IMG/VR virus record: IMGVR_UViG_3300036853_000446
Coordinates: 62,001-126,000 of that record
Length of the DNA: 64,000 nucleotides
Strand: one strand, 5' to 3'
Positions 152-37,106 of the stretch are shown one piece after another. A program made the position numbers and the translations under genes. The notes under the pieces were generated by a model. It was given only the letters and a program-made list of their open reading frames with translations. It was not told the origin of the DNA and did no database searches. Each line of letters starts with the position of its first letter. Position 1 is the stretch's first letter.

Positions 152-166
152 ATAAAAGCTGTCTCA
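152..166 (-). promoter_or_regulatory. CTTTT-core motif copy (putative late promoter)
   Basis: TGAGACAGCTTTTAT, intergenic, upstream of the ATG at 128. Confidence 0.35.
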
Positions 167-183
167 GCCTTCATCGAACGGGA

Positions 184-570
184 TCAGCGGTTGTTGAACG
201 ACGCAGTCAATCCTCCCGATGTCTGAATGGGCTCCGACACGTCGTAATCTTGAGCCACAATCTGCTGACCGGCCGCGTACGTGAGACGGACTCTCCAAAA
301 GCCCGCGGCATTGGGCCGAAATCGAAGGCTGTAACTACCTGGCGCTCCGGGGATTTCGTGGAAATAGAGACTGCCTGCGTTCACTTGGCTGTCAGAGACC
401 GGAGCCCCGTTCATGACGGGCCAAGGCTGCGGCACGTTGTTGCAAAACGTGTGTGACGTCAGGTCGACGAGCGTCAGCCCTTTAATGGGCGTGAACCCAT
501 CGACCTCAAAGAAATCCGCCTGATCAATCACCGTCTGATTGATCCGACCGACGCGACCTACCGACGCCAA
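184..570 (-). CDS. Hypothetical virion structural protein (128 aa)
   Basis: Beta-rich composition; TTG start preceded by GAAAGGG; fits the co-oriented gene series. Confidence 0.6.
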   Translation of the reverse strand: MASVGRVGRINQTVIDQADFFEVDGFTPIKGLTLVDLTSHTFCNNVPQPWPVMNGAPVSDSQVNAGSLYFHEIPGAPGSYSLRFRPNAAGFWRVRLTYAAGQQIVAQDYDVSEPIQTSGGLTASFNNR

Positions 571-601
571 ACGCTAACCCTTTCTCGCATGTGGTTCTTG
601 C

Positions 602-850
602 TCAAGGCATGTGGCAGAGGTGCTTCAGATTCTTGACCGTGTTGGCATAGAGAAGCGCGGGCACCTTGCCCGTTTGGTTGAACCACGCGGTCCGCAGCTC
701 CCCAATGTTCACGACCGTGCAATCGAAGACGAAGCTGATTCTCGTGCCATTCTTCGACGTGTTCTGCATCGGCGCCCCCGCGACCTGCAGGTAGGCAGCA
801 AAATACAGATCCGTGGTTTCGAATACGCTATCTCTTGTCTCGTCATTCAT
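602..850 (-). CDS. DUF5659-like small phage protein (82 aa)
   Basis: ETTDLYFAAYL...G...ISFVFD pattern typical of DUF5659. Confidence 0.6.
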   Translation of the reverse strand: MNDETRDSVFETTDLYFAAYLQVAGAPMQNTSKNGTRISFVFDCTVVNIGELRTAWFNQTGKVPALLYANTVKNLKHLCHMP

Positions 851-932
851 ATGGGGTCTCGTCTTCAGAGGACTTCATCTTCGGTCTGGGGCTGATTTTT
901 CAGGGTCTGGGTCTGGGTCTGAATCTGGATCT

Positions 933-959
933 AAAATCGAGGGGCTGGCGAAACCCCTC
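933..959 (-). terminator. Possible intrinsic terminator
   Basis: GAGGGGTT-TCGCC-AGCCCCTC hairpin followed by GATTTT, 9 nt after the stop at 968. Confidence 0.45.
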
Positions 960-967
960 CCAAGGCT

Positions 968-2092: not shown

Positions 2093-2104
2093 GGCTGAAC
2101 TCCT

Positions 2105-2492: not shown

Positions 2493-3119
2493 TCAAGCCG
2501 TGATCGTGAACGTGTTGCTGTTGCGACCGTCGGCGATGACCACGACGAAATCACCTGCGGCGAGCGCCCCGTTGACGAGGGTGTCGATCACGATCGACGT
2601 GTTCGATACCGCGCCTGGCGCTGTCGCGATGATCTGGGCCGTCGTCAGGGTCAGCGCCGGGGCGTTCACCGAACCACCCACACCGACTCCGAAGAGCTTG
2701 ACCACGGTCACGTCGGGGGCAACGCTGAGAAACCCCGTGCCCGTGATGGTCACGTCGCCCGCTGCCGGGACGGCGATCTGGGCGGCCGTGATGACCGGCG
2801 TCACCAGGTCGGAAGCGACGAGTGACACGACCGAGATGAGGCCAGCCATCTGGAGGCCTTTGATTTTGCCGCTGTGGGCCGACAACGTGACCCGCTGCGT
2901 CTCGTCGAGGTCGATGAATCCCGCCACCGCAGGGTTTCCCCGCCGGGTGCGAGGGATGTAGCACGGCTGCTTGGGAGCGCTGGCATAGCCGTCTCGCGCG
3001 TAGGCCATCGGATCTGCGGTCGATCCGAGGCGCTTCGCCGTCTTGTTTGGCAGCCCGTCGTCGATGTCGTCGACACGAAGGGGCCCCAAAGTGGTCTGGG
3101 CGTGAACTAGTCTCAGCAT
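2493..3119 (-). CDS. Virion structural protein with C-terminal IPT/TIG-like domain (208 aa)
   Basis: AGGAG SD before ATG; VTITGTGF...SIVI...VVVIADGRNSNTFTIT; paralogous to the C-terminus of 968..2092. Confidence 0.6.
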   Translation of the reverse strand: MLRLVHAQTTLGPLRVDDIDDGLPNKTAKRLGSTADPMAYARDGYASAPKQPCYIPRTRRGNPAVAGFIDLDETQRVTLSAHSGKIKGLQMAGLISVVSLVASDLVTPVITAAQIAVPAAGDVTITGTGFLSVAPDVTVVKLFGVGVGGSVNAPALTLTTAQIIATAPGAVSNTSIVIDTLVNGALAAGDFVVVIADGRNSNTFTITA

Positions 3120-3170
3120 GTTGACTCCTGAAGAGGGCGAGAAGGAGATGTCCTACCCAATTGCGGAGCC

Positions 3171-3185
3171 ATAAAAGGAACTTCA
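3171..3185 (-). promoter_or_regulatory. CTTTT-core motif copy
   Basis: TGAAGTTCCTTTTAT; the TGA is also the patatin stop codon. Confidence 0.35.
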
Positions 3186-4037
3186 GCTCATTTGACCCAC
3201 GGCGTCGGCATATCCTTGCGCCCGCATCTGCCGAACGCCCACTGGACCAAAGTCCAGAGAATCAACGGCCAGGTGCGTGCTCGGCTGCAAGAGACGAATT
3301 TTCACGTCCTTATACTCTCCTGTCAGCTTTGCCAGATCGTTCTTGAGTCCCGCCTCTTTGAGATCGCCCCGCGTCACCTCGTCGAGGGCGAGATCGATGG
3401 CCCGGAGCAGGCGCCAAAGGGTTGTCTTTCCCTTTGGGTCCCAATTGCCCCGGTCATCCGGATTGCTCGTCATGATGACGTCGATCTCAGTTGCGCCAGC
3501 CCGAATCGCCTCTCCGATGGGCGTCACGTTTCGCAGACCGCCATCCGTCCATTCTTCACCGTCAATCTTCAATGCCTTGAAGAAGCCCGGGAAACTCGAA
3601 GACGCCAGCACCCACGACACGAAATCCGGCGACTTCTCGGTAGCCACGAAGTAGTTCCCCGTGACCCAGCTCACTGCACCAAGCCTCACCAACCGGCCCG
3701 AAGCCGCGATCGCGTTCGTGTCTAGTTCTTGCTGAACCCATTTTTGCAGAGGGCCTGAGTCGTAGACGGAGCACTTCCAAAGTGCCGCGACGTACCAGAG
3801 AAACCAGAATTTCCGAATATTCGATGTCGCGACGCGATCCCACATCGAGGAGACCTTGGCATAAGCCGCCGCTGGATCCCCGAGCGGCGCTTGACTCAAA
3901 ACTGCTGCATTGAGAGCCCCTACCGACACACCGCAGACGATCTCATAATCTCGCTTCTGATCGAGCAAAAGATAGCGCAAACCGCCTTCCTGAAACGCGC
4001 CTTTACTCCCTCCACCGCTGAGCACGAGGGCTCTCAT
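3183..4037 (-). CDS. Patatin-like phospholipase (284 aa)
   Basis: Oxyanion loop LVLSGGGSKG, nucleophile elbow GVSVG, SSSFPGFF, catalytic DGG. Confidence 0.92.
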   Translation of the reverse strand: MRALVLSGGGSKGAFQEGGLRYLLLDQKRDYEIVCGVSVGALNAAVLSQAPLGDPAAAYAKVSSMWDRVATSNIRKFWFLWYVAALWKCSVYDSGPLQKWVQQELDTNAIAASGRLVRLGAVSWVTGNYFVATEKSPDFVSWVLASSSFPGFFKALKIDGEEWTDGGLRNVTPIGEAIRAGATEIDVIMTSNPDDRGNWDPKGKTTLWRLLRAIDLALDEVTRGDLKEAGLKNDLAKLTGEYKDVKIRLLQPSTHLAVDSLDFGPVGVRQMRAQGYADAVGQMS

Positions 4038-4052
4038 TTCACATCCACCCTG

Positions 4053-4811
4053 TTACGTTTGAAAACGCCACCATCGAATGTTGCCCCTCACCAGGAGTGG
4101 AGAAACCGGAGACACTTCGTGGGCAAAATAGCTCAGGCGCAAAACCAACGGCGGCGCGATCGTTTGAGTGCCGTCTGCAATGACGGGGGCAAGCCCACCC
4201 GGCGGAACGTAGACATTGTCCGCGAAGGACTTCAGCTTGACGTCCATGGGCGATGTCGGTGACGGTGCAAAGGGCCAAGGAGGAGCCCCCTTGAGGGCTT
4301 CCCAATCTGCTTGGGCCGCGCCCGTCGGAAAGACGACGGCAAATTGGACGTAGTCGTCTGCGTGCTGCTTGTCACCGATGACCCAGAGAGCCTGCACGCC
4401 CTGAATGTCGTAAGGCACATCGGGGGCAAGGTCACAGAAGCTCTCTGTCGGAGCCTCTTCCCCGTCCGTGGGCGACGTCACCGTAAACGCGAACCCCTTG
4501 ACCTGCAGAAGGTTCGCCTTGTTCGAGGGCTCCTGAACGATACGGAGAGCCCCGTCCGAGCGGACGTCAATGAGCGGCTTTCGCAACAGAGGTACGCCAT
4601 CATGAGCGCCGACGACGTCGTCGAGGGCCGCCTCTTGATCTGCATCAACGTCCGCCTTGAAATCGATCTTGATCGAGTCTCCCTGCGTCGTCACCCCCAC
4701 CAGCTCGATCCTGATACCGAGAGCGGCTCGAATCTCCTTGTCGAGCTTAGCTGCAGAGACGGCCCCGTTGAGCGTGTCTTCAGACGTCCTGTACGCAAAT
4801 GTTTGAGCCAT
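4053..4811 (-). CDS. Virion structural protein (about 252 aa)
   Basis: Probable start ATG 4811 overlapping the upstream TGA (TGATG); N-terminal domain paralogous to 4811..5419. Confidence 0.6.
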   Translation of the reverse strand: MAQTFAYRTSEDTLNGAVSAAKLDKEIRAALGIRIELVGVTTQGDSIKIDFKADVDADQEAALDDVVGAHDGVPLLRKPLIDVRSDGALRIVQEPSNKANLLQVKGFAFTVTSPTDGEEAPTESFCDLAPDVPYDIQGVQALWVIGDKQHADDYVQFAVVFPTGAAQADWEALKGAPPWPFAPSPTSPMDVKLKSFADNVYVPPGGLAPVIADGTQTIAPPLVLRLSYFAHEVSPVSPLLVRGNIRWWRFQT

Positions 4812-6559: not shown

Positions 6560-6563
6560 ATCT

Positions 6564-7871: not shown

Positions 7872-7872
7872 T

Positions 7873-13101: not shown

Positions 13102-13114
13102 CTCACAAGAGCAA

Positions 13115-13130
13115 GCTCAAAAGAGGACTA
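13115..13130 (-). promoter_or_regulatory. CTTTT-core motif copy
   Basis: TAGTCCTCTTTTGAGC, identical 16-mer to 20680..20695, 14 nt upstream of the fibre ATG. Confidence 0.55.
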
Positions 13131-13158
13131 AGCTTTCTGCGACGGATGGCCCCCCAGC

Positions 13159-14272: not shown

Positions 14273-15841
14273 TCAGGCCCAGCCGATGACCGTCAGCTGA
14301 TCGGGCTTCGAACCTGCACCCCGCAACGCAAACTCGAATTTCAGCTGACCATTGGCGAGCGAAGTCCCCGGGTACACGTCGTGGTTCGCGGCAGAGTCAG
14401 CCCCATTTCTGAGGAGCACACCGTTGAGGTAAACGTCAAAATCACTCACGAACGTGCCGCCAGACAGGTCTCCCAAATCAACGTCCAGGTTGGCGTCATG
14501 CGTTGGACCGGAGACGTTGCTATCAGCCCCGACATTGGCCGAGACTACGGCAACCGTCTTCGCACGGCCGGCCCGAGAATACGCCTGCAGGATGGCATTC
14601 AAAAGCGAGACTTCACCGAAGGTCGTCTCGAAGGTGTTCCACTCCCCCGTCGTTTCCGAAAGCTTGATACCGCTCGTCTGAGCCCAGGTAGAGCCCGCTT
14701 GGTTGCCGTCGTCGAGGTAGTACTCGCCCGCAGCGAAGACCCGAAGGTCACCCATGGTCGTCTCGACGACGCCGTCGTTCTTGCCGATATCGATGGGCCG
14801 CGTTCCGCCCGCACGGATCGTCGCGCCGTTGTTGAATTCGACGTCGATGGCGTTATTGACGTAGCTGTCGACGTCCAACCCAATCGCCAGCGTCGTAGTG
14901 CCGCCGAGAGAATCGTCCGTGACACTGAAAAGGTCCGCGTTGGCGTTGTCACGGATACGCCATCGGATGGCAGCGGCCAGATCCAAATCCGAGTTGCTGG
15001 CAAGCTCGACCGGTGTCGTGCCCTGGTTGGCATATGCACGCTGCCGCGTGACGTCCACGCTCGCCGACTGGTCGACGAAATCCGTGTTAGAGAGGAATGC
15101 CGTCTCTGGGAACGCATCGAAATTGATACGAAAGACGTAGTTATAGTTGATCGTCTTACCCGCGATATCCGCCACAGGGCAGGCTTCGAGGTCGTCGAAC
15201 CCTGCATTCAGACGTACGAAGCTCAACTTGACGCGGTTGCCACCCGAAGTGTCGTTAACCGCACCCCCGTCTGCGCCCGTCGATTCGTACTGGAGAAGGG
15301 CGAAAACATCGCGCCCCGCGGACTGAATGAACTGACCCGTCGCGGCATCTCGAATGACCGCCAAGTTTCTCGGATTGATGGCGTCGGGACCCGCAATCTC
15401 GACCAACTCGTGAACGTCGAACGCACCGCCGGACAACGCCGACTGGGCGACAACCGCGCCATTCTGAGTGAGGGCAACGGCTGCGGCCTGCGTTGGGGTC
15501 TCGGTGCTCGCGACGCTGAGAAGCTCCCAGTTTTGGGCCGCCGATACCGTCACGTCCGTGAGGACGTTGGCACGACCGAGGAACTTCTTTTCCTCGAGAT
15601 CATTCAGGTCGGTGTTGAGGTCGAAGACGGCTCTCTTCTTGCCGTTGACCGTGGGAATGTCATCGTACCAGTTGCCCGCGCCATCATCCCAGATCAAACG
15701 CTTGACCTGTGAACGTAGGCCGTTCAAATCATCTTCGATGTTGGCAGTAGCGGTCTCTAGTGTCGTGCCCGCCGCGATTGCATCATCGTAGAGAAACGAC
15801 TGCGCGATCTGAGCGTCTTGACGAATAAATGTACGGGCCAT
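14273..15841 (-). CDS. Virion structural protein (522 aa)
   Basis: GAGGA SD; C-terminal DFDVYLNGVLL...DVY domain related to 15891..16217. Confidence 0.65.
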   Translation of the reverse strand: MARTFIRQDAQIAQSFLYDDAIAAGTTLETATANIEDDLNGLRSQVKRLIWDDGAGNWYDDIPTVNGKKRAVFDLNTDLNDLEEKKFLGRANVLTDVTVSAAQNWELLSVASTETPTQAAAVALTQNGAVVAQSALSGGAFDVHELVEIAGPDAINPRNLAVIRDAATGQFIQSAGRDVFALLQYESTGADGGAVNDTSGGNRVKLSFVRLNAGFDDLEACPVADIAGKTINYNYVFRINFDAFPETAFLSNTDFVDQSASVDVTRQRAYANQGTTPVELASNSDLDLAAAIRWRIRDNANADLFSVTDDSLGGTTTLAIGLDVDSYVNNAIDVEFNNGATIRAGGTRPIDIGKNDGVVETTMGDLRVFAAGEYYLDDGNQAGSTWAQTSGIKLSETTGEWNTFETTFGEVSLLNAILQAYSRAGRAKTVAVVSANVGADSNVSGPTHDANLDVDLGDLSGGTFVSDFDVYLNGVLLRNGADSAANHDVYPGTSLANGQLKFEFALRGAGSKPDQLTVIGWA

Positions 15842-15866
15842 GGTTCTTGTTTCCTCAACTTGCGAT

Positions 15867-15882
15867 GCTCACAAGAACTCTA
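15867..15882 (-). promoter_or_regulatory. CTTTT-core motif variant
   Basis: TAGAGTTCTTGTGAGC, 12/16 identical to the 13115 and 20680 copies. Confidence 0.5.
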
Positions 15883-15890
15883 TTGGCACT

Positions 15891-20685: not shown

Positions 20686-20695
20686 AAGAGGACTA
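20680..20695 (-). promoter_or_regulatory. CTTTT-core motif copy
   Basis: TAGTCCTCTTTTGAGC, identical to 13115..13130; the TAG is the upstream gene's stop. Confidence 0.55.
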
Positions 20696-21820
20696 GGGCG
20701 CTGTCGCCTGGAAAGCTTCGGGAAACTCCGACACGAGGAGCATCCGCATCTCGGCGTCGGTCTCCGCCGCCGCCACCGCCCGGATCACGTCGGGACGGTC
20801 CTCAAAGTCGGCCTGGAGCCGCGCGAGCTTCTTACGAAGGGGGAGATCGAAATTGTAAAGGTCCGGGAAGTCCCGACAGATGGCTCGAGCGATAACTCGC
20901 CGCGGGTCGATATCCTCAAATGAGGTCACGGCCGGGGCCGTCTGCGGAGACGCGGCCCTTTTTGACTCGAGCGTCCCAGGCGCCTTCTTGGGCCCATTCG
21001 TTGTCGTGAAGCGCATGCCCTCATACTCCATGACGTGCATTTCGGCCGGAGCGCCGTCGAGGCCGCTCAAATCGACGGTACCGATGCCCCCACCGACCGT
21101 CGTCGAGACGTGCATGCCCATCGTATCGACGTCCTTGGGCGCCGGGATCATCGCTACGACATGACCCTGAGTCTCCGGGCCTTCAATCGCCGTCGGGGCG
21201 TCCGGAAGGTGGGCTGCGCGGCGCGAATCGATGTCAGCAAGATAGGCGTCACGCTGTTCGGGCGCCATGCGCTGCAACAATTCCTCCCGAGTCATGCCTC
21301 TACCCGGCTCGATCTGGACGCTGTTGGCCGCGGCAATGACCTGCTGCGAGTTGGAGCCATCCAACGTGGTGCGCACGCCCCCGCGTGTGTTAGCCAGGGT
21401 TTGCAACGTCCGCACCGGGACGCCGTCCTGAGACTCGACCTCGAGGTACTGCCGCTTCTGATTTGATTCGCGAACGCTCTCGGCGTGGTCGCGATAGTTC
21501 CCCACGATCTGCTCTTCAGCCTGAGCTGTCGCGATCAAAGACGCAGCGGCTCGAGGTGCGCTTGGGTTGCCCGTGTCCGCCGGACGCACGTGGATATTCG
21601 CCGATTGAGGCCGAGCGAGCGGCGCTGACGGATCATACGACGCCTCGGGCACGGCCCATCCCGTCTTGATGGCACCTTTGAAGGTGGGCAGAGGCTGCGG
21701 GGGACGGCCGCCCAACACGACGTTGTACCCGTCGAACTCGATGAGCATACCGCGTTGAACAGCAACCCCCGCCATTCCAAAATCGCGCGTCGCCCGGTAT
21801 TTATCCATCTGAGTCTGCAT
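20693..21820 (-). CDS. Hypothetical protein (about 375 aa)
   Basis: ATG 21820 (MQTQMDKY) has AGGAG SD at 7 nt; low-complexity middle, helical C-terminal domain. Confidence 0.65.
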   Translation of the reverse strand: MQTQMDKYRATRDFGMAGVAVQRGMLIEFDGYNVVLGGRPPQPLPTFKGAIKTGWAVPEASYDPSAPLARPQSANIHVRPADTGNPSAPRAAASLIATAQAEEQIVGNYRDHAESVRESNQKRQYLEVESQDGVPVRTLQTLANTRGGVRTTLDGSNSQQVIAAANSVQIEPGRGMTREELLQRMAPEQRDAYLADIDSRRAAHLPDAPTAIEGPETQGHVVAMIPAPKDVDTMGMHVSTTVGGGIGTVDLSGLDGAPAEMHVMEYEGMRFTTTNGPKKAPGTLESKRAASPQTAPAVTSFEDIDPRRVIARAICRDFPDLYNFDLPLRKKLARLQADFEDRPDVIRAVAAAETDAEMRMLLVSEFPEAFQATAP

Positions 21821-21838
21821 CGTTCGTCTCCTATTAGA

Positions 21839-21854
21839 GAGCCAAAAGTGGCCC
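21839..21854 (-). promoter_or_regulatory. CTTTT-core motif, partial
   Basis: GGGCCACTTTTGGCTC shares CCACTTTT with the 37091 copy. Confidence 0.3.
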
Positions 21855-21906
21855 CCAAGGAGACGAAGCAACAAATGGAATATTACCCAGCGAAGCGCCT
21901 TTCGCC

Positions 21907-22296: not shown

Positions 22297-22405
22297 AGCG
22301 TTTGATTCCTCTCTCGAGCGTCACCGTACACCGCTCAGCCAAGCTTCTGGGATCAACCCCACGCATCGTGTCAGCGCCAAGTCGAGCCGGGCGACAGAGC
22401 GCCGC

Positions 22406-23752: not shown

Positions 23753-23768
23753 GGCGTTCTTCTCCTGA

Positions 23769-23784
23769 GCGGAAAAAGTCCTGG
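23769..23784 (-). promoter_or_regulatory. CTTTT-core motif variant
   Basis: CCAGGACTTTTTCCGC upstream of the capsid gene; shares ACTTTT(T)CCGCT with the 37091 copy. Confidence 0.35.
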
Positions 23785-23808
23785 TTTTTGCCTGGGTTTT
23801 CGTGCTGC

Positions 23809-24519: not shown

Positions 24520-26238
24520 TCAGGAGCCGAACACGCCGCTCACGTCTGGAGCCGAAGACCACATCCCCGAGAGGCGGTTGATCTCTTCTGCGCCCGACGA
24601 CGGCATACCCGTCATTGCACCACCGAGTTGGCTCACGCCCGAGGAGGGACGAGTCCCAACCGTTCGAGTCGAAGCCGTTCTCGTGGCGGCGACCGGTCCG
24701 CGTCCGGACTGGAGCGCCTTTGCCTCGAGAGCCCGCTGCACCTCACCGTCGGAGGCGAAGATCTGCTGGAGAGCCTGATCGTCACCCTCGAACCCGAGAT
24801 CCATCTCCGGGGCGTCCATCTGAATGGATTCTTCAGTGAAATCGCCCTGGTCTTGCAGCATCTGGTCAACGAGATCATCATCCGCCATCAGCTGTTGCTG
24901 CTGGCCGAGCTGCTGCTGTTGACCGAGCCCGATCTGCAGACCCTGCTGCTGACCAATCTGCTGTTGATCCTGTTGCTGGCCAACCTGCTGTTGCTGCTGG
25001 CCAACCTGCTGCTGGTCCTGCTGCTCCTGGGACATCTGCTGCATGGCGTTCTGCACGAGCTGCTGAACCTGCGACTGCACCTGATCCTGAGCCATCGGGG
25101 CGAGCTGCTCGCTTGCGGCCTTGGCCAACCCGGGCAGGGCGACCTTGAAGGCTGCCGGACGGGACTTCACGGGAAGCGCGAGGAGTGCTGCAGCGGCCTG
25201 CTTGATGAGAGCGTAGGCCTCCTTACCCACCTGCTTCTCCTCCTGGCCCTCCTTCTTCTCATCGTCCTCGTCTTCGGCGAACTTGGACCGAGCTTTCAAC
25301 TTGGATTTGGACTTGGCCTGTTTTGATTGGCCCTCGTCGTCATCATCGTCGTCGTCCTGCTGCGCCTTGCGGGCACGAGCCTCTTTGGACTGACCGTCGT
25401 CGTCATCATCGTCGTCGTCCTGCTGCGCCTTCAGACGACGGCGGGCTTCCTTGGACTGACCCTCGTCGTCCTCGTCATCATCATCCTGAGCCTTGCGGGC
25501 CCGGGCTTCCTTGGACTGACCCTCGTCGTCCTCGTCATCATCGTCCTGCTGCGCCTTCAGACGACGGCGGGCTTCCTTGGACTGACTCTTGTCATCATCC
25601 TTGTCCTTGTCTTTCGCCTCGTCCTTCTTCTTCTGAATGTTCTTCAAGAACTCCGGCGGCAGATCTTTGGCCTGCTTGGCCTGACCCTCCTCGTCGTCCT
25701 CATCATCATCCTCGGACGCTTCCTTCTGCTGCCCGTCGTCATCATCGTCATCGTCGTCGTCCTGTTGCTCTTGGGCGAGACGCGCGAGGGTGGTGCGTAG
25801 GTTCGACAGCGGAAGATCCATGAGATTCAGCGCCTGGTCCTCGACGACCTGCTCCAAGGCTGTCCGTGGCAGCATCCGTCGAGCGACTTTGGTGGCGATA
25901 TCGGCCTTGGCGTGAACCTCGGCAATATCCGGGCGGCGCCCCGCTTGGCGGGACGGCGACACGCCGGGGGCCTTGTCGGGGTTGCCGAAGGTGTCCTTGC
26001 GGTACTCCGGCATCCCGATCTGATCCCGTTTGGTATTTCCATCCGGGCCCAGATCTGCCTTCCAACCTTTACCGGGGGGACTCTGGTCCTCGGCGAACTC
26101 GCTCGGGCCCCCGATCACGTAAGCATCTGCTGCCGGTTGTTGCTGAAGATGTTCCTGATTCATCGCTCGAGGATCTTCAGCGACTCTCCTCAACTGGCTT
26201 GCGATTCTCTGACGGCTCCAAGTAGTGCGTTCGCGCAT
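24520..26238 (-). CDS. Capsid scaffolding protein (about 572 aa)
   Basis: Between protease and decoration/capsid genes; acidic tandem repeats and Gln tract; ATG 26238 favoured over 26277. Confidence 0.7.
   Translation of the reverse strand: MRERTTWSRQRIASQLRRVAEDPRAMNQEHLQQQPAADAYVIGGPSEFAEDQSPPGKGWKADLGPDGNTKRDQIGMPEYRKDTFGNPDKAPGVSPSRQAGRRPDIAEVHAKADIATKVARRMLPRTALEQVVEDQALNLMDLPLSNLRTTLARLAQEQQDDDDDDDDDGQQKEASEDDDEDDEEGQAKQAKDLPPEFLKNIQKKKDEAKDKDKDDDKSQSKEARRRLKAQQDDDDEDDEGQSKEARARKAQDDDDEDDEGQSKEARRRLKAQQDDDDDDDDGQSKEARARKAQQDDDDDDDEGQSKQAKSKSKLKARSKFAEDEDDEKKEGQEEKQVGKEAYALIKQAAAALLALPVKSRPAAFKVALPGLAKAASEQLAPMAQDQVQSQVQQLVQNAMQQMSQEQQDQQQVGQQQQQVGQQQDQQQIGQQQGLQIGLGQQQQLGQQQQLMADDDLVDQMLQDQGDFTEESIQMDAPEMDLGFEGDDQALQQIFASDGEVQRALEAKALQSGRGPVAATRTASTRTVGTRPSSGVSQLGGAMTGMPSSGAEEINRLSGMWSSAPDVSGVFGS
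25330..25760 (-). repeat. Acidic tandem repeats in the scaffold gene
   Basis: (QQ)DDDDDDDGQSKEAR(RRLKA or ARKA) units, four SKEAR copies. Confidence 0.85.
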
Positions 26239-26273
26239 GGGAAAAATGCCCTTTCTCTGCACCGGTAGCGGGC

Positions 26274-26289
26274 GCATAAAAGGATTTCA
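26274..26289 (-). promoter_or_regulatory. CTTTT-core motif copy
   Basis: TGAAATCCTTTTATGC upstream of the scaffold; TGA is the protease stop; TCCTTTTATG shared with the 3171 copy. Confidence 0.4.
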
Positions 26290-27822
26290 GATCCCCAAAT
26301 CAAAAAGTCGTCCTTTGGTGATGAGGGCGAGCTTCTCGCTTTGCGTGGGCTCACGCCCGAGGACCCGACCACACGCGGTCAGGTAGGTCGCCACATCTAC
26401 ATAGGAGGCTGCGCCGCCCACCGCGAGCACGGTCCGATAGATCCGAGCCTCCCCAGCGACCGTCGGAGTCTTGTGAAGTAGATCCAAAACCCTAGATATT
26501 GCGAGAACATCGCGTCCCGAGAACCCTCGAGAGGCCTCTACGGCGCGCCACCCGCCGGCTCTGTGCAGGAGCACGCCCTCGGTGACTCGCGCCGCGTTCT
26601 GACGGTCCCCGATGAGGCGCCCCACGGCATGGGCGAGCCGCTGACGCAGGGGGCTCGCGCTCGCCGGGATCAAATTATTGTTGGAATGATCCTCTTCGAC
26701 CTCGTTCCCCGGACTCTTTCCCCCCATGTCCTGACGGATCTTCTGAACCGCGCGGTCGGTGAGCGCCTTGGCGAGATCTTTGACGACCGAGTCGAGTGGA
26801 TCCTTCTCCACTTTAGGACTCGGCTTCTTCCCAGCCCCCTCACCACTCTGATCGGTGTCATCACCGCCACCATCACCGTCATTACCAGCGCCGCCCGGGA
26901 ACTGCTCCTTCTCGTCACCGAAGTCGAGTGCGGTTCGAGCTGCCTTTGCGCGGGCGTTGCGATCAACACGACGGGGCGGCGCACTCAAGGCCACCTGCAG
27001 GCGATCGGTATGGAGATGATTGTAGAGTGAAGCCTCTTCGGGCGAGAGGATGTTTCGGACGACGGCGCCTTTGAAGGCGGGATTGCCAACCCAGGAGGCC
27101 TCTATAAATTTGTTAGAGTTCGGCTCGCTAACATTTCCACACAGCTCTGCAATCTTGCGTTGCGTCCCAAGGATATCGAGAAACGTGTTTCCCTTCTCAT
27201 ATTTTATGTGGGCACAAAGTTCGGTTTCGTCAGCGGCGACGTTGCCGCACTTAGTGCAGGCCGTGAAACTTACATTACAGCCCATCGAGAGCGTCTGGAG
27301 TTGCTTCGAGTTGATCGCCGCGATGAGCGGTCGATGCTTCCGAGCGGTTGCGACGAGAATGTCGATATAGACGCTGTCGCCGATATCGCGGGCGCAAGCG
27401 TCCACGATCTTGCCCTTGCTCATCTCGGGCAGCTGCAAGTGTTCGACGTAGTTTTCCCCGCCTACGAACGTGCGGAACGACGCGAGAAGTAGCTTCCTTT
27501 CCCATGCGTCGTGGTTCGAATTTATATAAGCGCTCGTCTTCGCGGTGATGTAGTAGTCCTGGAACCGTCGATCAACTGTGAACCCGTCCTCGAGGTGACG
27601 CCCGAGAGCCTTCGGACCATTCTCGGTGTCGACCGACGCCACGATAGTGCAATGGGTCAGGAGGTAGTCTTTGGGGGTAAACTCACCGAGGGTAACTTTG
27701 GAGGCACCTCGCCTAGCAAACGCCGACCCTAAAGCTTGCGCGCTGTCGCGCACTCGATCCCAAACCGGCATGTTGATGTCCGGCTTGATGATGTTGGCGT
27801 AGGCGTATTTGGCAAAAGCCAC
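26287..27822 (-). CDS. Prohead (capsid maturation) protease with C-terminal extension (about 511 aa)
   Basis: YVEH, LSMGC, FIEASWVGNPAF fit HK97/assemblin-type proteases; CxxC...C insertion; GTG 27822 has AAAGAAAGGT SD. Confidence 0.65.
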   Translation of the reverse strand: MAFAKYAYANIIKPDINMPVWDRVRDSAQALGSAFARRGASKVTLGEFTPKDYLLTHCTIVASVDTENGPKALGRHLEDGFTVDRRFQDYYITAKTSAYINSNHDAWERKLLLASFRTFVGGENYVEHLQLPEMSKGKIVDACARDIGDSVYIDILVATARKHRPLIAAINSKQLQTLSMGCNVSFTACTKCGNVAADETELCAHIKYEKGNTFLDILGTQRKIAELCGNVSEPNSNKFIEASWVGNPAFKGAVVRNILSPEEASLYNHLHTDRLQVALSAPPRRVDRNARAKAARTALDFGDEKEQFPGGAGNDGDGGGDDTDQSGEGAGKKPSPKVEKDPLDSVVKDLAKALTDRAVQKIRQDMGGKSPGNEVEEDHSNNNLIPASASPLRQRLAHAVGRLIGDRQNAARVTEGVLLHRAGGWRAVEASRGFSGRDVLAISRVLDLLHKTPTVAGEARIYRTVLAVGGAASYVDVATYLTACGRVLGREPTQSEKLALITKGRLFDLGI

Positions 27823-33525: not shown

Positions 33526-33979
33526 CCGCTGTCTCCTCTCCGAAGAGCTGTTCGAAGTCGTTGTCCTTGGGCAGCTGCAGGTTGAAGACGTCCTGCACGA
33601 CCGTCTTCACTCGCGCTCGGGCGGCTTCTTCACGCTCGTTCCGCTCCCGCTCCTGCTGCTCGACCCGGCTGGTTTCGAGCAGCCGATCCGTCGCCTGCGC
33701 GCGTTTCAGCGCCTGGCCCATGGCGCCGACCATCCGGGTCTGTGCCGTGTGGTAGATGCGGTAGCGGGGGTCTTCGCCATCGCCCCGAACCCGGCGTGTC
33801 GCCTGCTGGAGGCGATCACAGTGCCCTTGAAGCTCCACGAGCTTGGCCTCGAGGTCCCTTCTCGCCGTCTTGATGGCCGCGACGTGCTCCCCGACGGCCC
33901 GATCGCGCTGACGGCGGATCTCCGCGAGCCTCAGGCGTTCGACCTGGATTCGTTCGTTTTGAGTGTCTGAGGGGGGCAT
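33515..33979 (-). CDS. Coiled-coil hypothetical protein (154 aa)
   Basis: Overlaps the portal start by 11 nt; helical and charged. Confidence 0.6.
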   Translation of the reverse strand: MPPSDTQNERIQVERLRLAEIRRQRDRAVGEHVAAIKTARRDLEAKLVELQGHCDRLQQATRRVRGDGEDPRYRIYHTAQTRMVGAMGQALKRAQATDRLLETSRVEQQERERNEREEAARARVKTVVQDVFNLQLPKDNDFEQLFGEETADGS

Positions 33980-34006: not shown

Positions 34007-34022
34007 ATCGAAAAGAGCTTTA
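34007..34022 (-). promoter_or_regulatory. CTTTT-core motif copy
   Basis: TAAAGCTCTTTTCGAT; preceded by CCAA as in the 15867 copy. Confidence 0.45.
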
Positions 34023-34049
34023 TTGGCGTTCAGGGTTCCGAATTCACCC

Positions 34050-35357
34050 TCAGACTGACCGCCGACCTCGACGAGACCTGACAGGCTCCTCCTCAAAGAG
34101 GTTCGGATGGTCCCCCAAATACTCGTCCCAATCGAGCCCGCCGCTCAGCGGTGTCAATGAAGATTGCTCCGCCTTCGCGGGTTGAACCGCGTTCTCTAGG
34201 CCCAACGGGCCCAGGCGGAAATATCGAAAACCTCCGCCGCCCGTCCAAGCTACGGCCTTGCTGATCCCGCCCTGGTCCGTGCCGTCAACAACGGCCTTCA
34301 TCCGAGGCACAATGTGCGTGTGACAGTGCTCGCCCTGCTCAATCATTATCCAACGCCGACCCATCTTGTGAGCAACGGCCCCCGTGGTTCCGGAGCCCGC
34401 AAAGGCGTCGAGGACGAGGTCGCCGGGTTTGGTGGCGATGTGCACGATGCGCTGTAGAAGACGCTCAGGCTTCGGTGTGTCAAACACGTGCCGAGCACCG
34501 AAAAGTTCAATCATTTCCTTCTTGGCCTCGTCCGTGTGCCCCACGTCCGCATGCGGCCACCAATTGTGGGGCGTCATGCCGTCACGGACCTCTGAAAGAA
34601 AGAGCTTCACACGTGGCGCAGTGTTGGTTCCATCGCTGCCCCACCAGATGCGGTTCTCCGTGACGTGCCGCTCATGAGCCGCCCGGCTATACTTCCACGC
34701 CTTATTGGGGTTCTTGACGACTGCACCGGTGTTGGGGTTGGTAATGTCGTAACAAAGGTTACGTCGGATATGTGGAGCTGCTTGGTTGAGGTAATCGACT
34801 GACTTCCACGGTCCACGCGAATCATTATCTGGATTCGAATAGCGGGCTCGAGCCTCGTCGGTTCTAGGCAAGAGGCCGCTCTCGAACCGATTTGATTTCG
34901 AATAGACGAGCGCGAAATCCGTGATGGATGCAATGCCGCGACAATTGTTGCTGGCACTGTATTTCTTTTGCCAGGCGATGGTTGCTTGATACCCCGCTCG
35001 CCCGAAGATCTCGTCACACGTGACCTTCACGTAATGGACTCCATGATCGTCCAGCGTTACCCACAGCGATCCATCCTCCGAGAGAAACTGTCGAAGGAGT
35101 CGGATACGATCACGAAGGAATGCCAGCCAAACTCGATGCTCGACGTCGTCATCGTAATGCGCAAACTTGTTCCCCGTGTTATACGGCGGATCGATGTAGA
35201 TGCATTTCACCTGACCAGCGAACTCACGCTCCAGCAGCTTCAGCGCCGGCAGATTGTCCCCGTGGATCAGCCGATTCTCGAAAGTGCCTTCTACAACAGG
35301 CTGAGCAGGATACGAATGCTCGGGGTCTTCGACCAGCGTGAGCGGCGGATATTCCAC
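34050..35357 (-). CDS. Beta-class amino DNA methyltransferase, type III Mod-like, orphan (435 aa)
   Basis: IHGDNL, YIDPPYNTG, TPKPERLLQRI, VLDAFAGSGTTG, GGISK..W.GGGGFRY; no Res subunit adjacent. Confidence 0.92.
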   Translation of the reverse strand: MEYPPLTLVEDPEHSYPAQPVVEGTFENRLIHGDNLPALKLLEREFAGQVKCIYIDPPYNTGNKFAHYDDDVEHRVWLAFLRDRIRLLRQFLSEDGSLWVTLDDHGVHYVKVTCDEIFGRAGYQATIAWQKKYSASNNCRGIASITDFALVYSKSNRFESGLLPRTDEARARYSNPDNDSRGPWKSVDYLNQAAPHIRRNLCYDITNPNTGAVVKNPNKAWKYSRAAHERHVTENRIWWGSDGTNTAPRVKLFLSEVRDGMTPHNWWPHADVGHTDEAKKEMIELFGARHVFDTPKPERLLQRIVHIATKPGDLVLDAFAGSGTTGAVAHKMGRRWIMIEQGEHCHTHIVPRMKAVVDGTDQGGISKAVAWTGGGGFRYFRLGPLGLENAVQPAKAEQSSLTPLSGGLDWDEYLGDHPNLFEEEPVRSRRGRRSV

Positions 35358-35413
35358 ATCCTGCAGCTACACCGGTTGACCTCTATGACTTTCGGAAGTT
35401 ACGGTTTTCGCAG

Positions 35414-35653
35414 CTAATTGGATGAGGACTTGCGAGCGCCCCAGGCCTTGACCGATTCGATCAGCAGATTGATGTGCTCGGGGCTGCCCTGGCAAACTTC
35501 GAACCAGGATCCGCCGAGCTTTCGAAAGACGACCCGCACCGTCAAATACGCGCGGCGATTCATCTTCACCGAGTCCCCCAGGATGTTGTCAGCGAGCATC
35601 CCGATCACCTGGTTGGCAAAGACCAACGGGGGCGGCTTGGATTCGTCGTCCAT
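35414..35653 (-). CDS. Hypothetical protein (79 aa)
   Basis: Co-oriented, fills the gap, protein-like composition. Confidence 0.5.
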   Translation of the reverse strand: MDDESKPPPLVFANQVIGMLADNILGDSVKMNRRAYLTVRVVFRKLGGSWFEVCQGSPEHINLLIESVKAWGARKSSSN

Positions 35654-35829
35654 GCATTACCGGGCGAAACGAAGGACTCCGCGACTGTCTGCACCCTCTC
35701 GAGCCGATTTTCGTGAACAAGACCGACGAATTCCTTCAGATCGCGCTCGACGACACATGCATCTACTTCACCGTTTACGCGAACGGTGGCGAGCAGGCCA
35801 TTCTGCGCGCTCACAAGTGACAGATTCAC
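35605..35829 (-). CDS. Hypothetical protein (74 aa)
   Basis: Co-oriented; 49-nt overlap with the next gene lowers confidence. Confidence 0.35.
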   Translation of the reverse strand: MNLSLVSAQNGLLATVRVNGEVDACVVERDLKEFVGLVHENRLERVQTVAESFVSPGNAWTTNPSRPRWSLPTR

Positions 35830-35849
35830 CTCAAACCGAGTGCGGTTCC

Positions 35850-37079
35850 TCAGCTATAAAACTTGAGAACCTGACGGATTGCAGCCGGTGGGACCCGGTA
35901 CTCGCGCTCGCCTCCGTGGAGCGATATACCCGGGTACTCCATGTCGACCTCCACCGAGACAACGCCGATGTCCTTGGGATCTGCATCCTTTAGGTAGGCG
36001 ATGAGCTTATGCCGATTCATGTGTACGGGATTCAGGCGACTCGTTTGGACGTACAAAAAGGCATCGTACACGTTGAACACATCGATCGGGTCGCTCAGTA
36101 CCTCGTCTATGTCCCGCTCCTCGGACGCATGACCGATGGCTTTTACCGTCAGGACCCACCGACGTCCGTTGTGCGTGAGGTCCTGATATTGCTTCTTAGC
36201 CTGGCTACCGAGCCAAAGCAGAAACTCTTCGATGTTGCCTTCTCGAAGGCCCCAATCGAGAATCTGTGACGCTTTGATTTGCCCGGTGGCGATCAAGGCG
36301 GCCTCTTTGAATGAGCGGGCGATATCCAAGGCTGCCTTCAGGTCGTACGTGAACGAAATCCCATTGCCACCGGACTTCAAACTCTGCGAGCCTCCGAGGC
36401 CGATCTGGTCCTTGGGCATCTCGGCGGAGAAACCCCGTTGGTAGATTTCCCGTGCCTTGACCGATGCGTGATAGAGTGTCTCGACTTTGCCTGGCTTGGC
36501 GTCACCGGTCTCGAAGGCCTCGAGCTGAGCCAACTTGCCATCTAAGAACATTACGAGCTTGCGAGTCTCTTCGGCGAACTCCTCGAGAATTTTCAGGGGC
36601 TCCGGCATCAGGCCAACCTCATCCATTTCATTCCAGGCGAATCTATCCAGGTTCGTCAGCGCCGTCCCGAGGCCGCGAAGAGTAGCGCCATACTTATATT
36701 GATCCTTGTCGAGAACATTCGCAACGGCCTCCACCAACGGCCGCGCAAACCTATCCAACATGTGGGGATTCTTAGGCGCCAATTGGTTGAGGTAATGAAA
36801 CGCGGAGTCGAGGTCATTCTGGTGGCGGTTCAGTGCCTCGCGAATCTTCGACCACGTGGGCAGCCCGACCTTGGCCAACACCTCTTCTTTCAATGACTGC
36901 CAGTTAGCCTTCTCAGCAAGCTCGGTTGCCAACGCCATGAGCTGTATGAGGCCCTTCTTCGTGTCCTTCTCGAGGGCTTTCAGAAAAACGAGGATTCTGC
37001 GAGGCGGCAGGATGAGGGCACGTCTCGAAAATCCCCCGAGCGTGAGGTAACGTTGGGCAACGCGGGCAGAGAGATTCAT
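35850..37079 (-). CDS. ADP-ribosyltransferase-fold protein with N-terminal RVA motif (409 aa)
   Basis: TLYHAS...RGF...GNGISFT.D...A..IA and C-terminal GGEREYRVPP; N-terminus MNLSARVAQRYL. Confidence 0.6.
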   Translation of the reverse strand: MNLSARVAQRYLTLGGFSRRALILPPRRILVFLKALEKDTKKGLIQLMALATELAEKANWQSLKEEVLAKVGLPTWSKIREALNRHQNDLDSAFHYLNQLAPKNPHMLDRFARPLVEAVANVLDKDQYKYGATLRGLGTALTNLDRFAWNEMDEVGLMPEPLKILEEFAEETRKLVMFLDGKLAQLEAFETGDAKPGKVETLYHASVKAREIYQRGFSAEMPKDQIGLGGSQSLKSGGNGISFTYDLKAALDIARSFKEAALIATGQIKASQILDWGLREGNIEEFLLWLGSQAKKQYQDLTHNGRRWVLTVKAIGHASEERDIDEVLSDPIDVFNVYDAFLYVQTSRLNPVHMNRHKLIAYLKDADPKDIGVVSVEVDMEYPGISLHGGEREYRVPPAAIRQVLKFYS

Positions 37080-37090
37080 GCCCCTAATCA

Positions 37091-37106
37091 GCGGAAAAGT
37101 GGATTA
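37091..37106 (-). promoter_or_regulatory. CTTTT-core motif copy
   Basis: TAATCCACTTTTCCGC, 12/16 identical to the 13115 copy. Confidence 0.5.

What the first reader, a model, noticed from the sequence alone, without database searches (positions are those of the whole stretch)
152..37106. CTTTT-core DNA motif upstream of ten structural genes (candidate phage late promoter)
Seen on the minus strand: TAGTCCTCTTTTGAGC identical at 13115..13130 and 20680..20695; TAGAGTTCTTGTGAGC (15867), TAATCCACTTTTCCGC (37091), TAAAGCTCTTTTCGAT (34007), TGAAATCCTTTTATGC (26274), TGAAGTTCCTTTTAT (3171), TGAGACAGCTTTTAT (152), weaker at 21839 and 23769. Most copies fit A-N5-CTTTT. All lie about 10-55 nt upstream of head/tail gene starts, and I found none in replication-block intergenic gaps. 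It does not resemble sigma70 boxes. In three copies the leading TAG/TGA is also a stop codon. Several downstream genes lack a well-spaced SD. Inference: late promoter or activator site, possibly read via the sigma4-like protein at 45861..46577.
Basis: partly seen in the sequence, partly recalled or inferred. Interest (0 to 1): 0.65.

Follow-up and report, generated by a model that had tools for sequence, protein, structure and literature searches.

The report
Conserved promoter box of megaphage virion genes
The pyrimidine-rich motif is a real 16-base box, conserved across a large family of ~400-kb soil phages, that sits just upstream of virion genes and most likely acts as their phage-specific (probably late) promoter, though no RNA data exist to show where transcription starts.

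Summary
152 is weak. 21839 is a hairpin loop, with the true box 30 nt upstream at 21871-21886. 23769 is not a member. The motif is better described as a single 16-nt block, YCnATARTCYTYTT(G/T/A)T; "CTTTT" is only its local 3' end.

The window lies in a 407-kb soil virus whose capsid protein has over 500 relatives in IMG/VR. A matrix trained only on relatives finds the box in this genome. In the all-minus block at score >=12 it gives 7 sense intergenic hits, 0 antisense intergenic and 2 sense coding. In 39 relatives the reciprocal scan gives 71 sense against 1 antisense intergenic hit. The box recurs upstream of orthologous genes whose proteins are only 35-60% identical.

It is absent from the replication block, where a different box (GGTGTA, 9-11 nt before ATG) is used. 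About a quarter of boxes sit a fixed 14-15 nt before a start codon. The others are followed by a hairpin that ties the box's 3' flank to the Shine-Dalgarno/AUG, as at T4 gene e.

Best reading: a phage-specific, probably late, promoter class. The reading factor is unknown and the link to the sigma4-like protein is untested.

The parts
20684..20699 (-). P3 box (16 nt). Its TAG is the stop codon of gene 20693-21820. It lies upstream of the 914-aa gene 17929-20673, with ATG 10 or 16 nt after the last T.
   Evidence: PWM 16.1; the two relatives with an ortholog carry a box at the same place
13119..13134 (-). P3 box upstream of the 1742-aa tail-fibre/virion protein 7873-13101; 17 nt to ATG 13101
   Evidence: PWM 14.9-15.0; phrog_11518 tail fibre
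13105..13120 (-). Second, tandem P3 copy, 14 nt downstream of the first
   Evidence: PWM 14.6; tandem copies are also seen in relatives
26276..26291 (-). P3 box upstream of gene 24520-26238. The conserved MRERTTW start is at 26238, giving a 37-nt leader with a GAAAGGG Shine-Dalgarno.
   Evidence: PWM 14.9-15.0; boxes, often tandem, stand before the orthologs in relatives
21871..21886 (-).
   Evidence: PWM 14.8; a TAATCCAyTTrT-type box stands upstream of the ortholog in about 27 distinct relatives
3171..3186 (-). P3 box upstream of gene 2493-3119, with a 51-nt leader
   Evidence: PWM 14.2
37095..37110 (-). P3 box 15 nt before the ATG of gene 35850-37079 (fixed-spacing class, no Shine-Dalgarno)
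   Evidence: PWM 10.6-10.7
15871..15886 (-). P3 box upstream of the 522-aa gene 14273-15841, with a 29-nt leader
   Evidence: PWM 10.5; a box is conserved before the ortholog in 5 relatives
34011..34026 (-). Borderline P3 box upstream of gene 33515-33979
   Evidence: PWM 8.9; same hairpin leader architecture, z = -3.24
152..167 (-). Weak P3-like site upstream of the gene starting at 128; membership doubtful
   Evidence: PWM 5.8
21818..21872 (-). Leader hairpin. A 5' arm starting at the box's last bases pairs with AGGAGACGAA, which is the Shine-Dalgarno and ends 2 nt before the ATG.
   Evidence: MFE -29.1 kcal/mol, z = -6.65, 0 of 200 shuffles fold as well
3117..3171 (-). Leader hairpin. The 5' arm, directly after the box, pairs with the GGAGUCA Shine-Dalgarno region.
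   Evidence: z = -3.43
26236..26284 (-). Leader hairpin. UCCUUUU of the box pairs with the GAAAGGG Shine-Dalgarno.
   Evidence: z = -2.19
15839..15879 (-). Leader hairpin. GUUCUUGU of the box pairs with ACAAGAAC just before the AUG.
   Evidence: 8 perfect pairs, z = -1.56
23765..23785 (-).
   Evidence: PWM -6.5; most relatives have only a 10-20 nt gap with a Shine-Dalgarno there, and the closest relative lacks CTTTT
22327..22332 (-). GGTGTA (P1) box upstream of gene 21907-22296; a different promoter class inside the structural block
35368..35373 (-). GGTGTA (P1) box upstream of the DNA methyltransferase gene 34050-35357
51726..51731 (-). GGTGTA (P1) box heading the co-directional run 51711 -> clamp loader -> NusG-FEN -> sigma4-like. 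Further P1 boxes lie at 45808-45813, 55353-55358 and 60786-60791.
45861..46577 (-). sigma4-like protein, 238 aa: a sigma-70 region-4 domain at aa 60-111, a second weaker r4-like stretch near aa 167-192, and no region 2. It is a candidate reader of the box, not a demonstrated one.

Best explanation
The motif is a clade-conserved, phage-specific promoter element, called P3 here. It is a single asymmetric 16-bp block, YCnATARTCYTYTT(G/T/A)T, with no -35/-10 partner. It drives virion genes and some other genes of a ~400-kb soil phage, and probably acts late in infection.

It is one of three promoter-like classes in the genome:
- P1: GGTGTA 9-11 nt before ATG, used by replication, recombination and methylase genes.
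- P2: an ECF-like GGATCAAA-N13-CCGTACT, with ATG 6 nt after it.
- P3: this motif.

Inferred mechanism:
1. Transcription starts somewhere 7-16 nt downstream of the last T of the box. I favour about +15/16.
2. At about a quarter of sites the start codon sits exactly there, giving leaderless or near-leaderless mRNA.
3. At the other sites, the DNA between the box and the inferred start encodes the 5' strand of a hairpin that sequesters the Shine-Dalgarno/AUG.
4. Read-through transcripts from upstream (earlier) promoters would therefore be translationally silent, while P3-initiated transcripts lack that strand and are translated. This is the logic of T4 genes e, soc, 49 and I-TevI.

Shown: the motif, its conservation, its strand and position bias, its spacing, and the hairpins. 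Inferred: promoter function, the start point, late timing, and the reading factor.
For: 1. Independent discovery. In 298 unique intergenic gaps of 45 relatives, CTTTTAT occurs 16 times sense and 0 antisense, TAATCC 17 vs 2, and TAGTCCT 10 vs 0. EM finds the block in about 86 of those gaps.

2. Matrix trained on relatives, scanned on this genome. In the all-minus 138-kb block at score >=12: 7 sense intergenic hits (9.9 kb), 0 antisense intergenic, 2 sense coding (128.6 kb).

3. Reciprocal scan of 39 relatives at score >=13: 71 sense intergenic, 1 antisense intergenic, 33 sense coding, 5 antisense coding, over 69 kb intergenic and 660 kb coding.

4. Orthologous conservation despite 35-60% protein identity. 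The box stands upstream of the orthologs of 20693-21820 (about 27 relatives), 14273-15841 (5), 24520-26238, 17929-20673 and 28952-31672.

5. Replication in a second complete genome, G004 (407 kb), including the same spacing peak.

6. Spacing. Among 95 sites, none has a start codon 4-11 nt after the last T, and 22 have one at 12-18 nt (mode 15). A CN-hydrolase Pfam match begins at residue 2 of one such ORF, which confirms that start.

7. Divergent intergenic region. Genome 357334-357446 holds two opposed boxes, each 12 nt (from the matrix window's end) before divergent 272-aa and 430-aa genes. It contains no P1 or P2.

8. Class separation. 12 boxes in the structural block against 0 in the replication block (p = 0.004). 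P1 goes the other way, and P1 heads the DNA methyltransferase gene that sits inside the structural block.

9. Hairpins. All five leadered window sites fold with the 5' arm at or after the box and the 3' arm on the Shine-Dalgarno/AUG (z from -1.6 to -6.65). Across 52 leadered sites, at least 12 of the 19 bases in the Shine-Dalgarno/AUG window pair with the box-proximal 24 nt in 33%, against 12.6% when 5' segments are swapped between sites.

10. Precedent. The T4 arrangement is documented in PMC3014915.

11. No intrinsic terminators at the sites, and sigma-70-like matches are at chance level.
Against: - There is no transcript evidence of any kind. Only one DNA run holds the sequence.
- No conserved -10-like element or initiating nucleotide lies downstream of the box. 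If the ATG of the fixed-spacing class is the start point, this is unusual for bacterial RNAP holoenzymes.
- The pyrimidine-rich box resembles the anti-Shine-Dalgarno sequence. Shuffled or swapped 5' segments pair with the Shine-Dalgarno region nearly as often at low stringency.
- The box also precedes non-structural enzymes, so 'late' is not secured by gene function.
- The closest cultured relative, Tunturi_5, does not carry the box.
Confidence: 0.7

Rival explanations
1. The box acts in RNA rather than DNA. It would be the recognition site of a sequence-specific endoribonuclease or RNA-binding protein that processes or unmasks long polycistronic transcripts just upstream of each virion gene, removing the 5' arm of the inhibitory hairpin.
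For: - The box is co-oriented with the genes and lies in the region that forms the 5' arm of the Shine-Dalgarno/AUG-sequestering hairpins.
- The 138-kb block is unidirectional, with no predicted terminators, so long transcripts are plausible.
- No RNAP or sigma for the box was identified.
Against: - In the divergent intergenic region at genome 357334-357446 both genes need promoters. Two opposed boxes are the only recurrent motif in those 113 bp.
- The fixed 14-15 nt spacing to start codons mirrors the leaderless geometry of the two other promoter classes.
- Boxes head isolated genes on both strands of the mixed-strand region.
Confidence: 0.12
2. The motif is only an anti-Shine-Dalgarno-like pyrimidine tract, selected because it pairs with purine-rich ribosome-binding sites as a translational attenuator. 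It would have no role in transcription.
For: - UCCUCUU-type cores are complementary to GGAG/AAGAGGA.
- In two window leaders (15839-15880 and 26236-26285) the box itself is the 5' arm.
- Low-stringency pairing is as frequent with shuffled or swapped 5' segments.
Against: - The 5' half of the box (YCnATAR) is conserved but is not complementary to a Shine-Dalgarno.
- About a quarter of boxes precede genes with neither a Shine-Dalgarno nor a hairpin, at a fixed spacing.
- In three of the five window leaders the 5' arm lies after the box rather than in it.
- An information content of about 14 bits with near-invariant T positions is more than pairing alone would require.
Confidence: 0.08
3. The motif is a chance or compositional artefact: T-rich intergenic DNA in a 60% G+C genome.
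For: - Intergenic T-runs are generally commoner than coding ones.
- Two of the ten listed sites are not members.
Against: - 71:1 sense to antisense among intergenic hits in relatives.
- Conservation at orthologous positions.
- TTTT as such is not strand-biased in intergenic DNA: 14 vs 10.
- Intergenic G+C is 59%, close to that of the genome.
Confidence: 0.02
4. The motif is the U-tract end of intrinsic terminators between genes.
For: The T-run lies in intergenic gaps. One site outside the window (genome about 40322) follows a G+C-rich hairpin.
Against: - No terminator-like hairpin is predicted at any window box, and terminator-like sites occur at shuffle level.
- The hairpins lie downstream of the box, not upstream of it.
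- Nothing is conserved upstream of the box.
Confidence: 0.02

Closest known systems
Phage T4 late promoters (TATAAATA, read by gp55 with gp33 and the sliding clamp), including the arrangement at genes e, soc, 49 and I-TevI
   Same: - A single short block without a -35 element.
- It heads virion genes inside long co-directional units.
- It lies on or just before the DNA that encodes the 5' strand of a hairpin sequestering the Shine-Dalgarno/AUG, so only transcripts started at the late promoter would be translatable (PMC3014915; hairpins).
- The candidate factor gene sits next to clamp-loader and replication genes.
   Different: - The sequence is unrelated: pyrimidine-rich, 16 nt, not an A/T-rich octamer.
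- If the fixed-spacing ATG marks the start point, the box lies at about -31 to -16 rather than at -10.
- No gp55 or gp33 homolog was recognised.
- The start point and timing are unmeasured.
T4 middle promoters (MotA box near -30, read by sigma appropriation with AsiA and MotA)
   Same: An upstream phage-specific box in the -35/spacer region, read (in the speculative model) by a phage DNA-binding protein that takes over the role of sigma region 4.
   Different: T4 middle promoters keep a sigma-70 -10 element, whereas no -10 is conserved here. No MotA or AsiA homologs were identified. The sigma4-like protein is itself a region-4 fold rather than a MotA fold.
Promoters of phage single-subunit or non-canonical RNAPs (T7-type 17-23 bp blocks; phiKZ/AR9 non-virion RNAP late promoters)
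   Same: One contiguous, asymmetric, phage-specific block, found only upstream of phage genes and conserved within a clade.
   Different: No PF00940, Rpb2_6 or Rpb1_2 domain was found in the genome. T7-type and AR9 motifs abut the start site, whereas here nothing is conserved in the 15 nt after the box.
Leaderless-mRNA promoters (a -10 box about 7 nt before an ATG, as in Actinobacteria and Deinococcus)
   Same: This genome's P1 and P2 classes show exactly that geometry. A quarter of P3 boxes also sit at a fixed distance from start codons that lack a Shine-Dalgarno.
   Different: The P3 spacing (14-15 nt after the last conserved base) is too long for a -10 hexamer.

Membership tests
sigma-70-type promoter | A TTGACA-like -35 and a TATAAT-like -10 hexamer, 16-18 bp apart | tested here: not met
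   Consensus scan at shuffle level with no hit at the boxes. The aligned sites show one block and nothing at -35 or -10 positions.
T4-type late promoter | An A/T-rich octamer TATAAATA centred at -10 | tested here: not met
   The consensus is YCnATARTCYTYTT(G/T/A)T.
T4-type late promoter | A gp55-like sigma and a gp33-like co-activator encoded by the phage | tested here: inconclusive
   The only sigma-like gene has region 4 but no region 2. gp55 and gp33 profiles were not searched specifically.
T4 gene-e-type arrangement (late promoter inside an RBS-sequestering hairpin) | The Shine-Dalgarno/AUG pairs with a 5' strand that lies at or just downstream of the promoter box | tested here: met
   Five of five leadered window sites. 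Site-specific excess over swapped controls: 33% vs 12.6%.
T4 gene-e-type arrangement (late promoter inside an RBS-sequestering hairpin) | Transcripts from the box start within or after the 5' strand | not testable with these tools
   No RNA run holds the sequence.
Single-subunit (T7-like) RNAP promoter | The phage encodes a PF00940 RNAP | tested here: inconclusive
   No match in the genome, but the family also rang in none of the control genomes, and the record is estimated to be 86% complete.
Multisubunit phage RNAP promoter (phiKZ/AR9 type) | The phage encodes beta/beta'-like subunits | tested here: not met
   PF00562 and PF00623 are absent, while all 14 control genomes ring. Very divergent subunits cannot be excluded.
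ECF sigma promoter | A GGAAC-like -35 and a CGT-containing -10, about 16 bp apart | tested here: not met
   Not met by P3. Met by the separate P2 class, GGATCAAA-N13-CCGTACT.
sigma-54 promoter | GG at -24 and GC at -12, 10 bp apart | tested here: not met
   No GG or GC dinucleotides at the required columns of the logo.
Intrinsic terminator | A G+C-rich hairpin directly followed by a T-run | tested here: not met
   None predicted at any box. Nothing is conserved upstream of the box.

The most novel reading that the evidence does not exclude
P3 is an upstream-only promoter, occupying about -31 to -16 with no -10 element. It would be read either by host core RNAP redirected through the conserved sigma4-like two-HTH protein, which has no sigma region 2, or by an unrecognised phage polymerase. 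Either would be an initiation mode not described for bacterial RNAP. It would be coupled genome-wide to leaderless translation and to hairpin gating of read-through transcripts in a widespread soil megaphage clade.
Probability: 0.2. Interest if true: 0.8.

Novelty: new variant of a known kind. Interest (0 to 1): 0.55.

Why it matters
The window belongs to a very large, uncultivated family of ~400-kb soil phages. Its capsid protein has over 500 relatives in IMG/VR, and the nearest isolate infects an acidobacterium. I found no description of this family's gene regulation: three full-text searches were run, and the paper on the nearest isolate never mentions promoters, sigma factors or transcription.

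The box, together with the GGTGTA and ECF-like classes noticed here, gives a first regulatory map:
- three promoter-like classes;
- widespread leaderless mRNAs;
- a T4-like device that keeps virion genes untranslated on read-through transcripts.

This map could be used to call gene starts and operons in these genomes, and to sort their many unknown genes into temporal classes. It also singles out one conserved factor, the sigma4-like protein, for biochemical testing. If the box really works from -31 to -16 without a -10 element, it would be a new way of directing a bacterial RNA polymerase.

Tried and rejected
- Megablast of 10 kb of the window against GenBank phages found no match.
- RNA evidence: one search for sequencing runs found a single soil-metagenome DNA run and no RNA run. 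Read laying was therefore not used and no start-site mapping was possible.
- Major capsid gene: its upstream box was expected to be conserved but is not.
- Relatives of the 409-aa gene 35850-37079: none in IMG/VR by pattern search and none in five whole related genomes. Conservation of the 37095 box could not be checked.
- Relatives of gene 2493-3119: only two near-identical loci were found and they were not analysed further.
- Tunturi_5, the closest cultured relative: its structural intergenic gaps lack the box, so it cannot serve directly as an experimental model. Its paper says nothing about promoters.
- Terminator hypothesis: rejected.
- Assigning P1, P2 or P3 to all divergent gene heads explained only about 38% of them. 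My home-made gene calls in the mixed-strand region are too rough, so that test was abandoned in favour of one clear divergent region.
- First hairpin control: mononucleotide shuffles of the 5' segment did not discriminate, 0.75 vs 0.75. The site-swap control at higher stringency did.
- Pfam and PHROGs left most box-headed window proteins unannotated.
- Foldseek of the sigma4-like model gave only local region-4 matches and no whole-protein match.
- Literature searches found no description of this motif.

Full report
CONTEXT. The window is bases 62001-126000 of a 407,634-bp IMG/VR virus record with about 60% G+C. All genes in the first 138 kb lie on the minus strand. The region 138-358 kb has mixed strands.

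Annotated genes in or near the window:
- 22874-23752: major capsid protein.
- 31672-33525: portal.
- 26287-27822: head maturation protease, 36% identical to Tunturi_5 gp331.
- 7873-13101: a 1742-aa tail-fibre/virion protein.
- Genome 3660-7139: a baseplate-J protein.
- Window 37-64 kb: RecA, a clamp loader, a NusG-FEN fusion and the sigma4-like protein.

The capsid protein has 532 relatives in IMG/VR at 88-92% identity, while other proteins are only 35-64% identical. The nearest GenBank records are an uncultured 485-kb phage (83%), Tunturiibacter phage Tunturi_5 (49%) and Bacillus phage G (40%). The only public run holding the sequence is a soil metagenome.

OBSERVATION. On the sense strand of intergenic DNA in window 1-37200, CTTTT occurs 10 times in 2,006 bp. 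It occurs 2 times antisense, 12 times in 35,194 bp of sense coding DNA, and once in 2,229 bp of intergenic DNA in the replication half. TTTT as such is not strand-biased (14 vs 10), so the signal is not simple T-richness.

THE MOTIF IS CLADE-WIDE.
- In 298 unique intergenic gaps from 45 relatives' capsid neighbourhoods, CTTTTAT (16 vs 0), TAATCC (17 vs 2) and TAGTCCT (10 vs 0) occur almost only on the sense strand.
- EM on those gaps gives a block in about 86 of them.
- Aligning 139 strong sites from relatives and this genome shows a single 16-nt block, YCnATARTCYTYTT(G/T/A)T. Nothing is conserved for 25 nt upstream or 45 nt downstream.
- The matrix trained only on relatives, scanned over this genome's all-minus block at score >=12, gives 7 sense intergenic hits in 9.9 kb, 0 antisense intergenic, and 2 sense coding in 128.6 kb. 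It also gives 8 antisense coding hits, several of which are CTTCTTC-type low complexity.
- The reciprocal scan of 39 distinct relatives at score >=13 gives 71 sense intergenic, 1 antisense intergenic, 33 sense coding and 5 antisense coding hits.
- At orthologous positions the box recurs although the flanks are unalignable. It stands before the orthologs of 20693-21820 in about 27 distinct relatives, and before those of 14273-15841, 24520-26238, 17929-20673 and 28952-31672.
- A second complete genome, G004 (407 kb), repeats the pattern.
- Sites turn over. Relatives have a box between the portal gene and its downstream gene, where this genome has an ATGA overlap instead.

SITE-BY-SITE.
- Good members: 20680 (16.1), 13115 (14.9, plus a tandem copy 14 nt downstream scoring 14.6), 26274 (14.9), 3171 (14.2), 37091 (10.6) and 15867 (10.5).
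- 34007 is borderline (8.9) but has the same leader architecture.
- 152 is weak (5.8).
- 21839 is the loop of a leader hairpin. The real box for that gene is 21871-21886 (14.8), and it is the one conserved in relatives.
- 23769, upstream of the capsid gene, is not a member. Most relatives have only a 10-20 nt gap there, and the closest relative has no CTTTT.

CLASS SEPARATION. k-mer enrichment over all upstream regions revealed two other, stronger signals.
- P1: GGTGTA. Of 150 copies, 55 have an ORF-opening ATG or GTG 9-11 nt downstream. Two same-composition control hexamers each give 4.
- P2: a bipartite GGATCAAA-N13-CCGTACT. There are 30 sites, all but one between 209 and 324 kb, and 11 have the ATG exactly 6 nt after the second element.

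Both have the geometry of a -10 box before a leaderless mRNA. In the window, P1 heads the replication genes (45813, 51731, 55358, 60791). It also heads the DNA methyltransferase (35373) and a small gene (22332) that sit inside the structural block. P3 boxes number 12 in the structural block's 6.3 kb of intergenic DNA and 0 in the replication block's 3.7 kb (p = 0.004).

P3 is not purely structural. Elsewhere in the genome it heads topoisomerase-IB-like, amylase-like and CN-hydrolase genes and many unknown genes.

SPACING AND THE PROMOTER ARGUMENT. Among 95 boxes from this genome and relatives, no start codon lies 4-11 nt after the last T, and 22 lie at 12-18 nt, with a mode of 15. One such start is confirmed by a Pfam match that begins at residue 2.

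In the divergent intergenic region at genome 357334-357446 (113 bp), two opposed boxes each stand 12 nt (from the matrix window's end) before divergent 272-aa and 430-aa genes. No P1 or P2 is present there. Both genes need a promoter, and the box is the only recurrent element. No terminator-like hairpins coincide with the boxes, and sigma-70-like matches are at chance level.

LEADER HAIRPINS. All five leadered window sites fold into a hairpin. Its 5' arm lies in or directly after the box, and its 3' arm covers the Shine-Dalgarno or abuts the AUG.
- The strongest is 21818-21880 (-29.1 kcal/mol, z = -6.65).
- The others have z = -3.43, -3.24, -2.19 and -1.56.

Across 52 leadered sites, at least 12 of the 19 bases in the Shine-Dalgarno/AUG window pair with the 24 box-proximal bases in 17 sites (33%). 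With 5' segments swapped between sites the figure is 12.6%. Mean MFE is -15.3 against -12.1 kcal/mol. At low stringency the controls do as well, because the box is pyrimidine-rich.

The arrangement matches T4 genes e, soc, 49 and I-TevI. There the late promoter lies on the DNA encoding the 5' strand of an inhibitory helix, so that only late transcripts are translated (PMC3014915). The part of the 5' arm that pairs with the Shine-Dalgarno/AUG lies within about 14 nt of the last T. That agrees with a start point near +15/16, which is the position of the ATG in the fixed-spacing class. A start as close as +7 (reading the last six bases as a -10-like hexamer) is not excluded.

WHO READS IT. No T7-like RNAP and no beta or beta' domains were found. 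The T7 search had no positive control, and the record is estimated to be 86% complete.

The only sigma-like gene is 45861-46577. It has a clear sigma-70 region 4 at aa 60-111, a second weak region-4-like stretch near aa 167-192, and no region 2. It belongs to a family of 444 proteins in the 1.8-billion-protein library. The profile matches region 4 of SigF, FliA and SigA. The model (pLDDT 86.6) matches only region-4 domains.

The gene lies at the end of a co-directional run that begins at the P1 box at 51731 and includes the clamp loader and the NusG-FEN gene. The same synteny and a 48% identical ortholog occur in G004, which has P1 and P3 but not P2. So the protein is not tied to P2, but nothing distinguishes P3 from P1 as its target.

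VERDICT. The box is a real, conserved, strand- and position-specific element. It is best explained as a phage-specific promoter class for virion and other probably late genes (confidence 0.7). The inferred start is 7-16 nt downstream, with a T4-like hairpin gate.

Rivals:
- An RNA-level processing or binding site (0.12).
- A mere anti-Shine-Dalgarno attenuator (0.08).
- Chance or composition (0.02).
- A terminator (0.02).

It is a new variant of a known kind, phage late-type promoters.

Noticed in passing
window 22327-22332, 35368-35373, 45808-45813, 51726-51731, 55353-55358, 60786-60791 (all minus strand); genome-wide: GGTGTA box (P1). Of 150 copies in the genome, 55 have an ORF-opening ATG or GTG 9-11 nt downstream, against 4 in each same-composition control. 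This looks like a -10-type promoter of leaderless mRNAs. It is conserved in relatives (GGTGTA 23 sense vs 2 antisense in their intergenic gaps). In the window it heads replication, recombination and methyltransferase genes.
   Followed up: partly
outside the window: genome 209-324 kb plus one site at 387.7 kb, 30 sites (e.g. 254823, 278310, 312546): Bipartite ECF-sigma-like promoter class, GGATCAAA-N12-13-CCGTACT, with the ATG 6 nt after it in 11 sites (leaderless). It is absent from the related complete genome G004.
   Followed up: partly
window 46590-48434 (-): A 614-aa fusion: a NusG-like N-terminus (NGN + KOW, both just under the Pfam cut-offs) joined to a 5'-3' exonuclease/FEN domain. It lies between the clamp loader and the sigma4-like gene. 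The same order occurs in G004 (38% identity).
   Followed up: partly
window about 24406-24470 (-), upstream of gene 23809-24405; also window about 851-960 and genome about 51044-51150: Short periodic repeats of the CAGAT/AGATG/CAGAC type. In about 35 relatives the ortholog of 23809-24405 is preceded by a conserved AGATGnAGATGnAnAT run followed by CACCCCAGCAA. This is a different conserved upstream element of unknown role.
   Followed up: no
loci L004-L050, just upstream of the capsid gene's Shine-Dalgarno: Many relatives carry a small palindrome or hairpin of the GGGAATTCCC / CGGAACTTCCG type between the upstream gene and the capsid Shine-Dalgarno.
   Followed up: no
window 37079 (start of 35850-37079); genome 153422, 161556, 357333: Several box-headed proteins share an N-terminal ...A(R)RVAxRY/F... 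motif (for example MNLSARVAQRYL and VTSIAARVAARYKS). It could be a shared targeting or propeptide signal. This was seen by eye only.
   Followed up: no
genome 148568, 159505, 206838, 314878, 318943; G004 about 78700: A paralogous family of small proteins with (M)xHDYDRR at or near the N-terminus. Each is preceded by a P3 box, in both this genome and G004.
   Followed up: no
L085 (Tunturiibacter phage Tunturi_5, record 261087-301968): Intergenic gaps of its structural genes lack the P3 box. They repeatedly show a tGACTAC-like sequence instead, possibly that phage's own late box.
   Followed up: no
genome 356515-357333 (-) and 357447-358739 (+): A eukaryotic/poxvirus-type topoisomerase IB (PF01028, E = 9e-26) and an alpha-amylase-family protein are encoded divergently. 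Each has a P3 box 12 nt before its start.
   Followed up: partly
window 37143-39152 (-): A 669-aa protein with only a faint TerL ATPase match (E = 0.024). It is possibly the large terminase. It is not headed by a P3 box.
   Followed up: no
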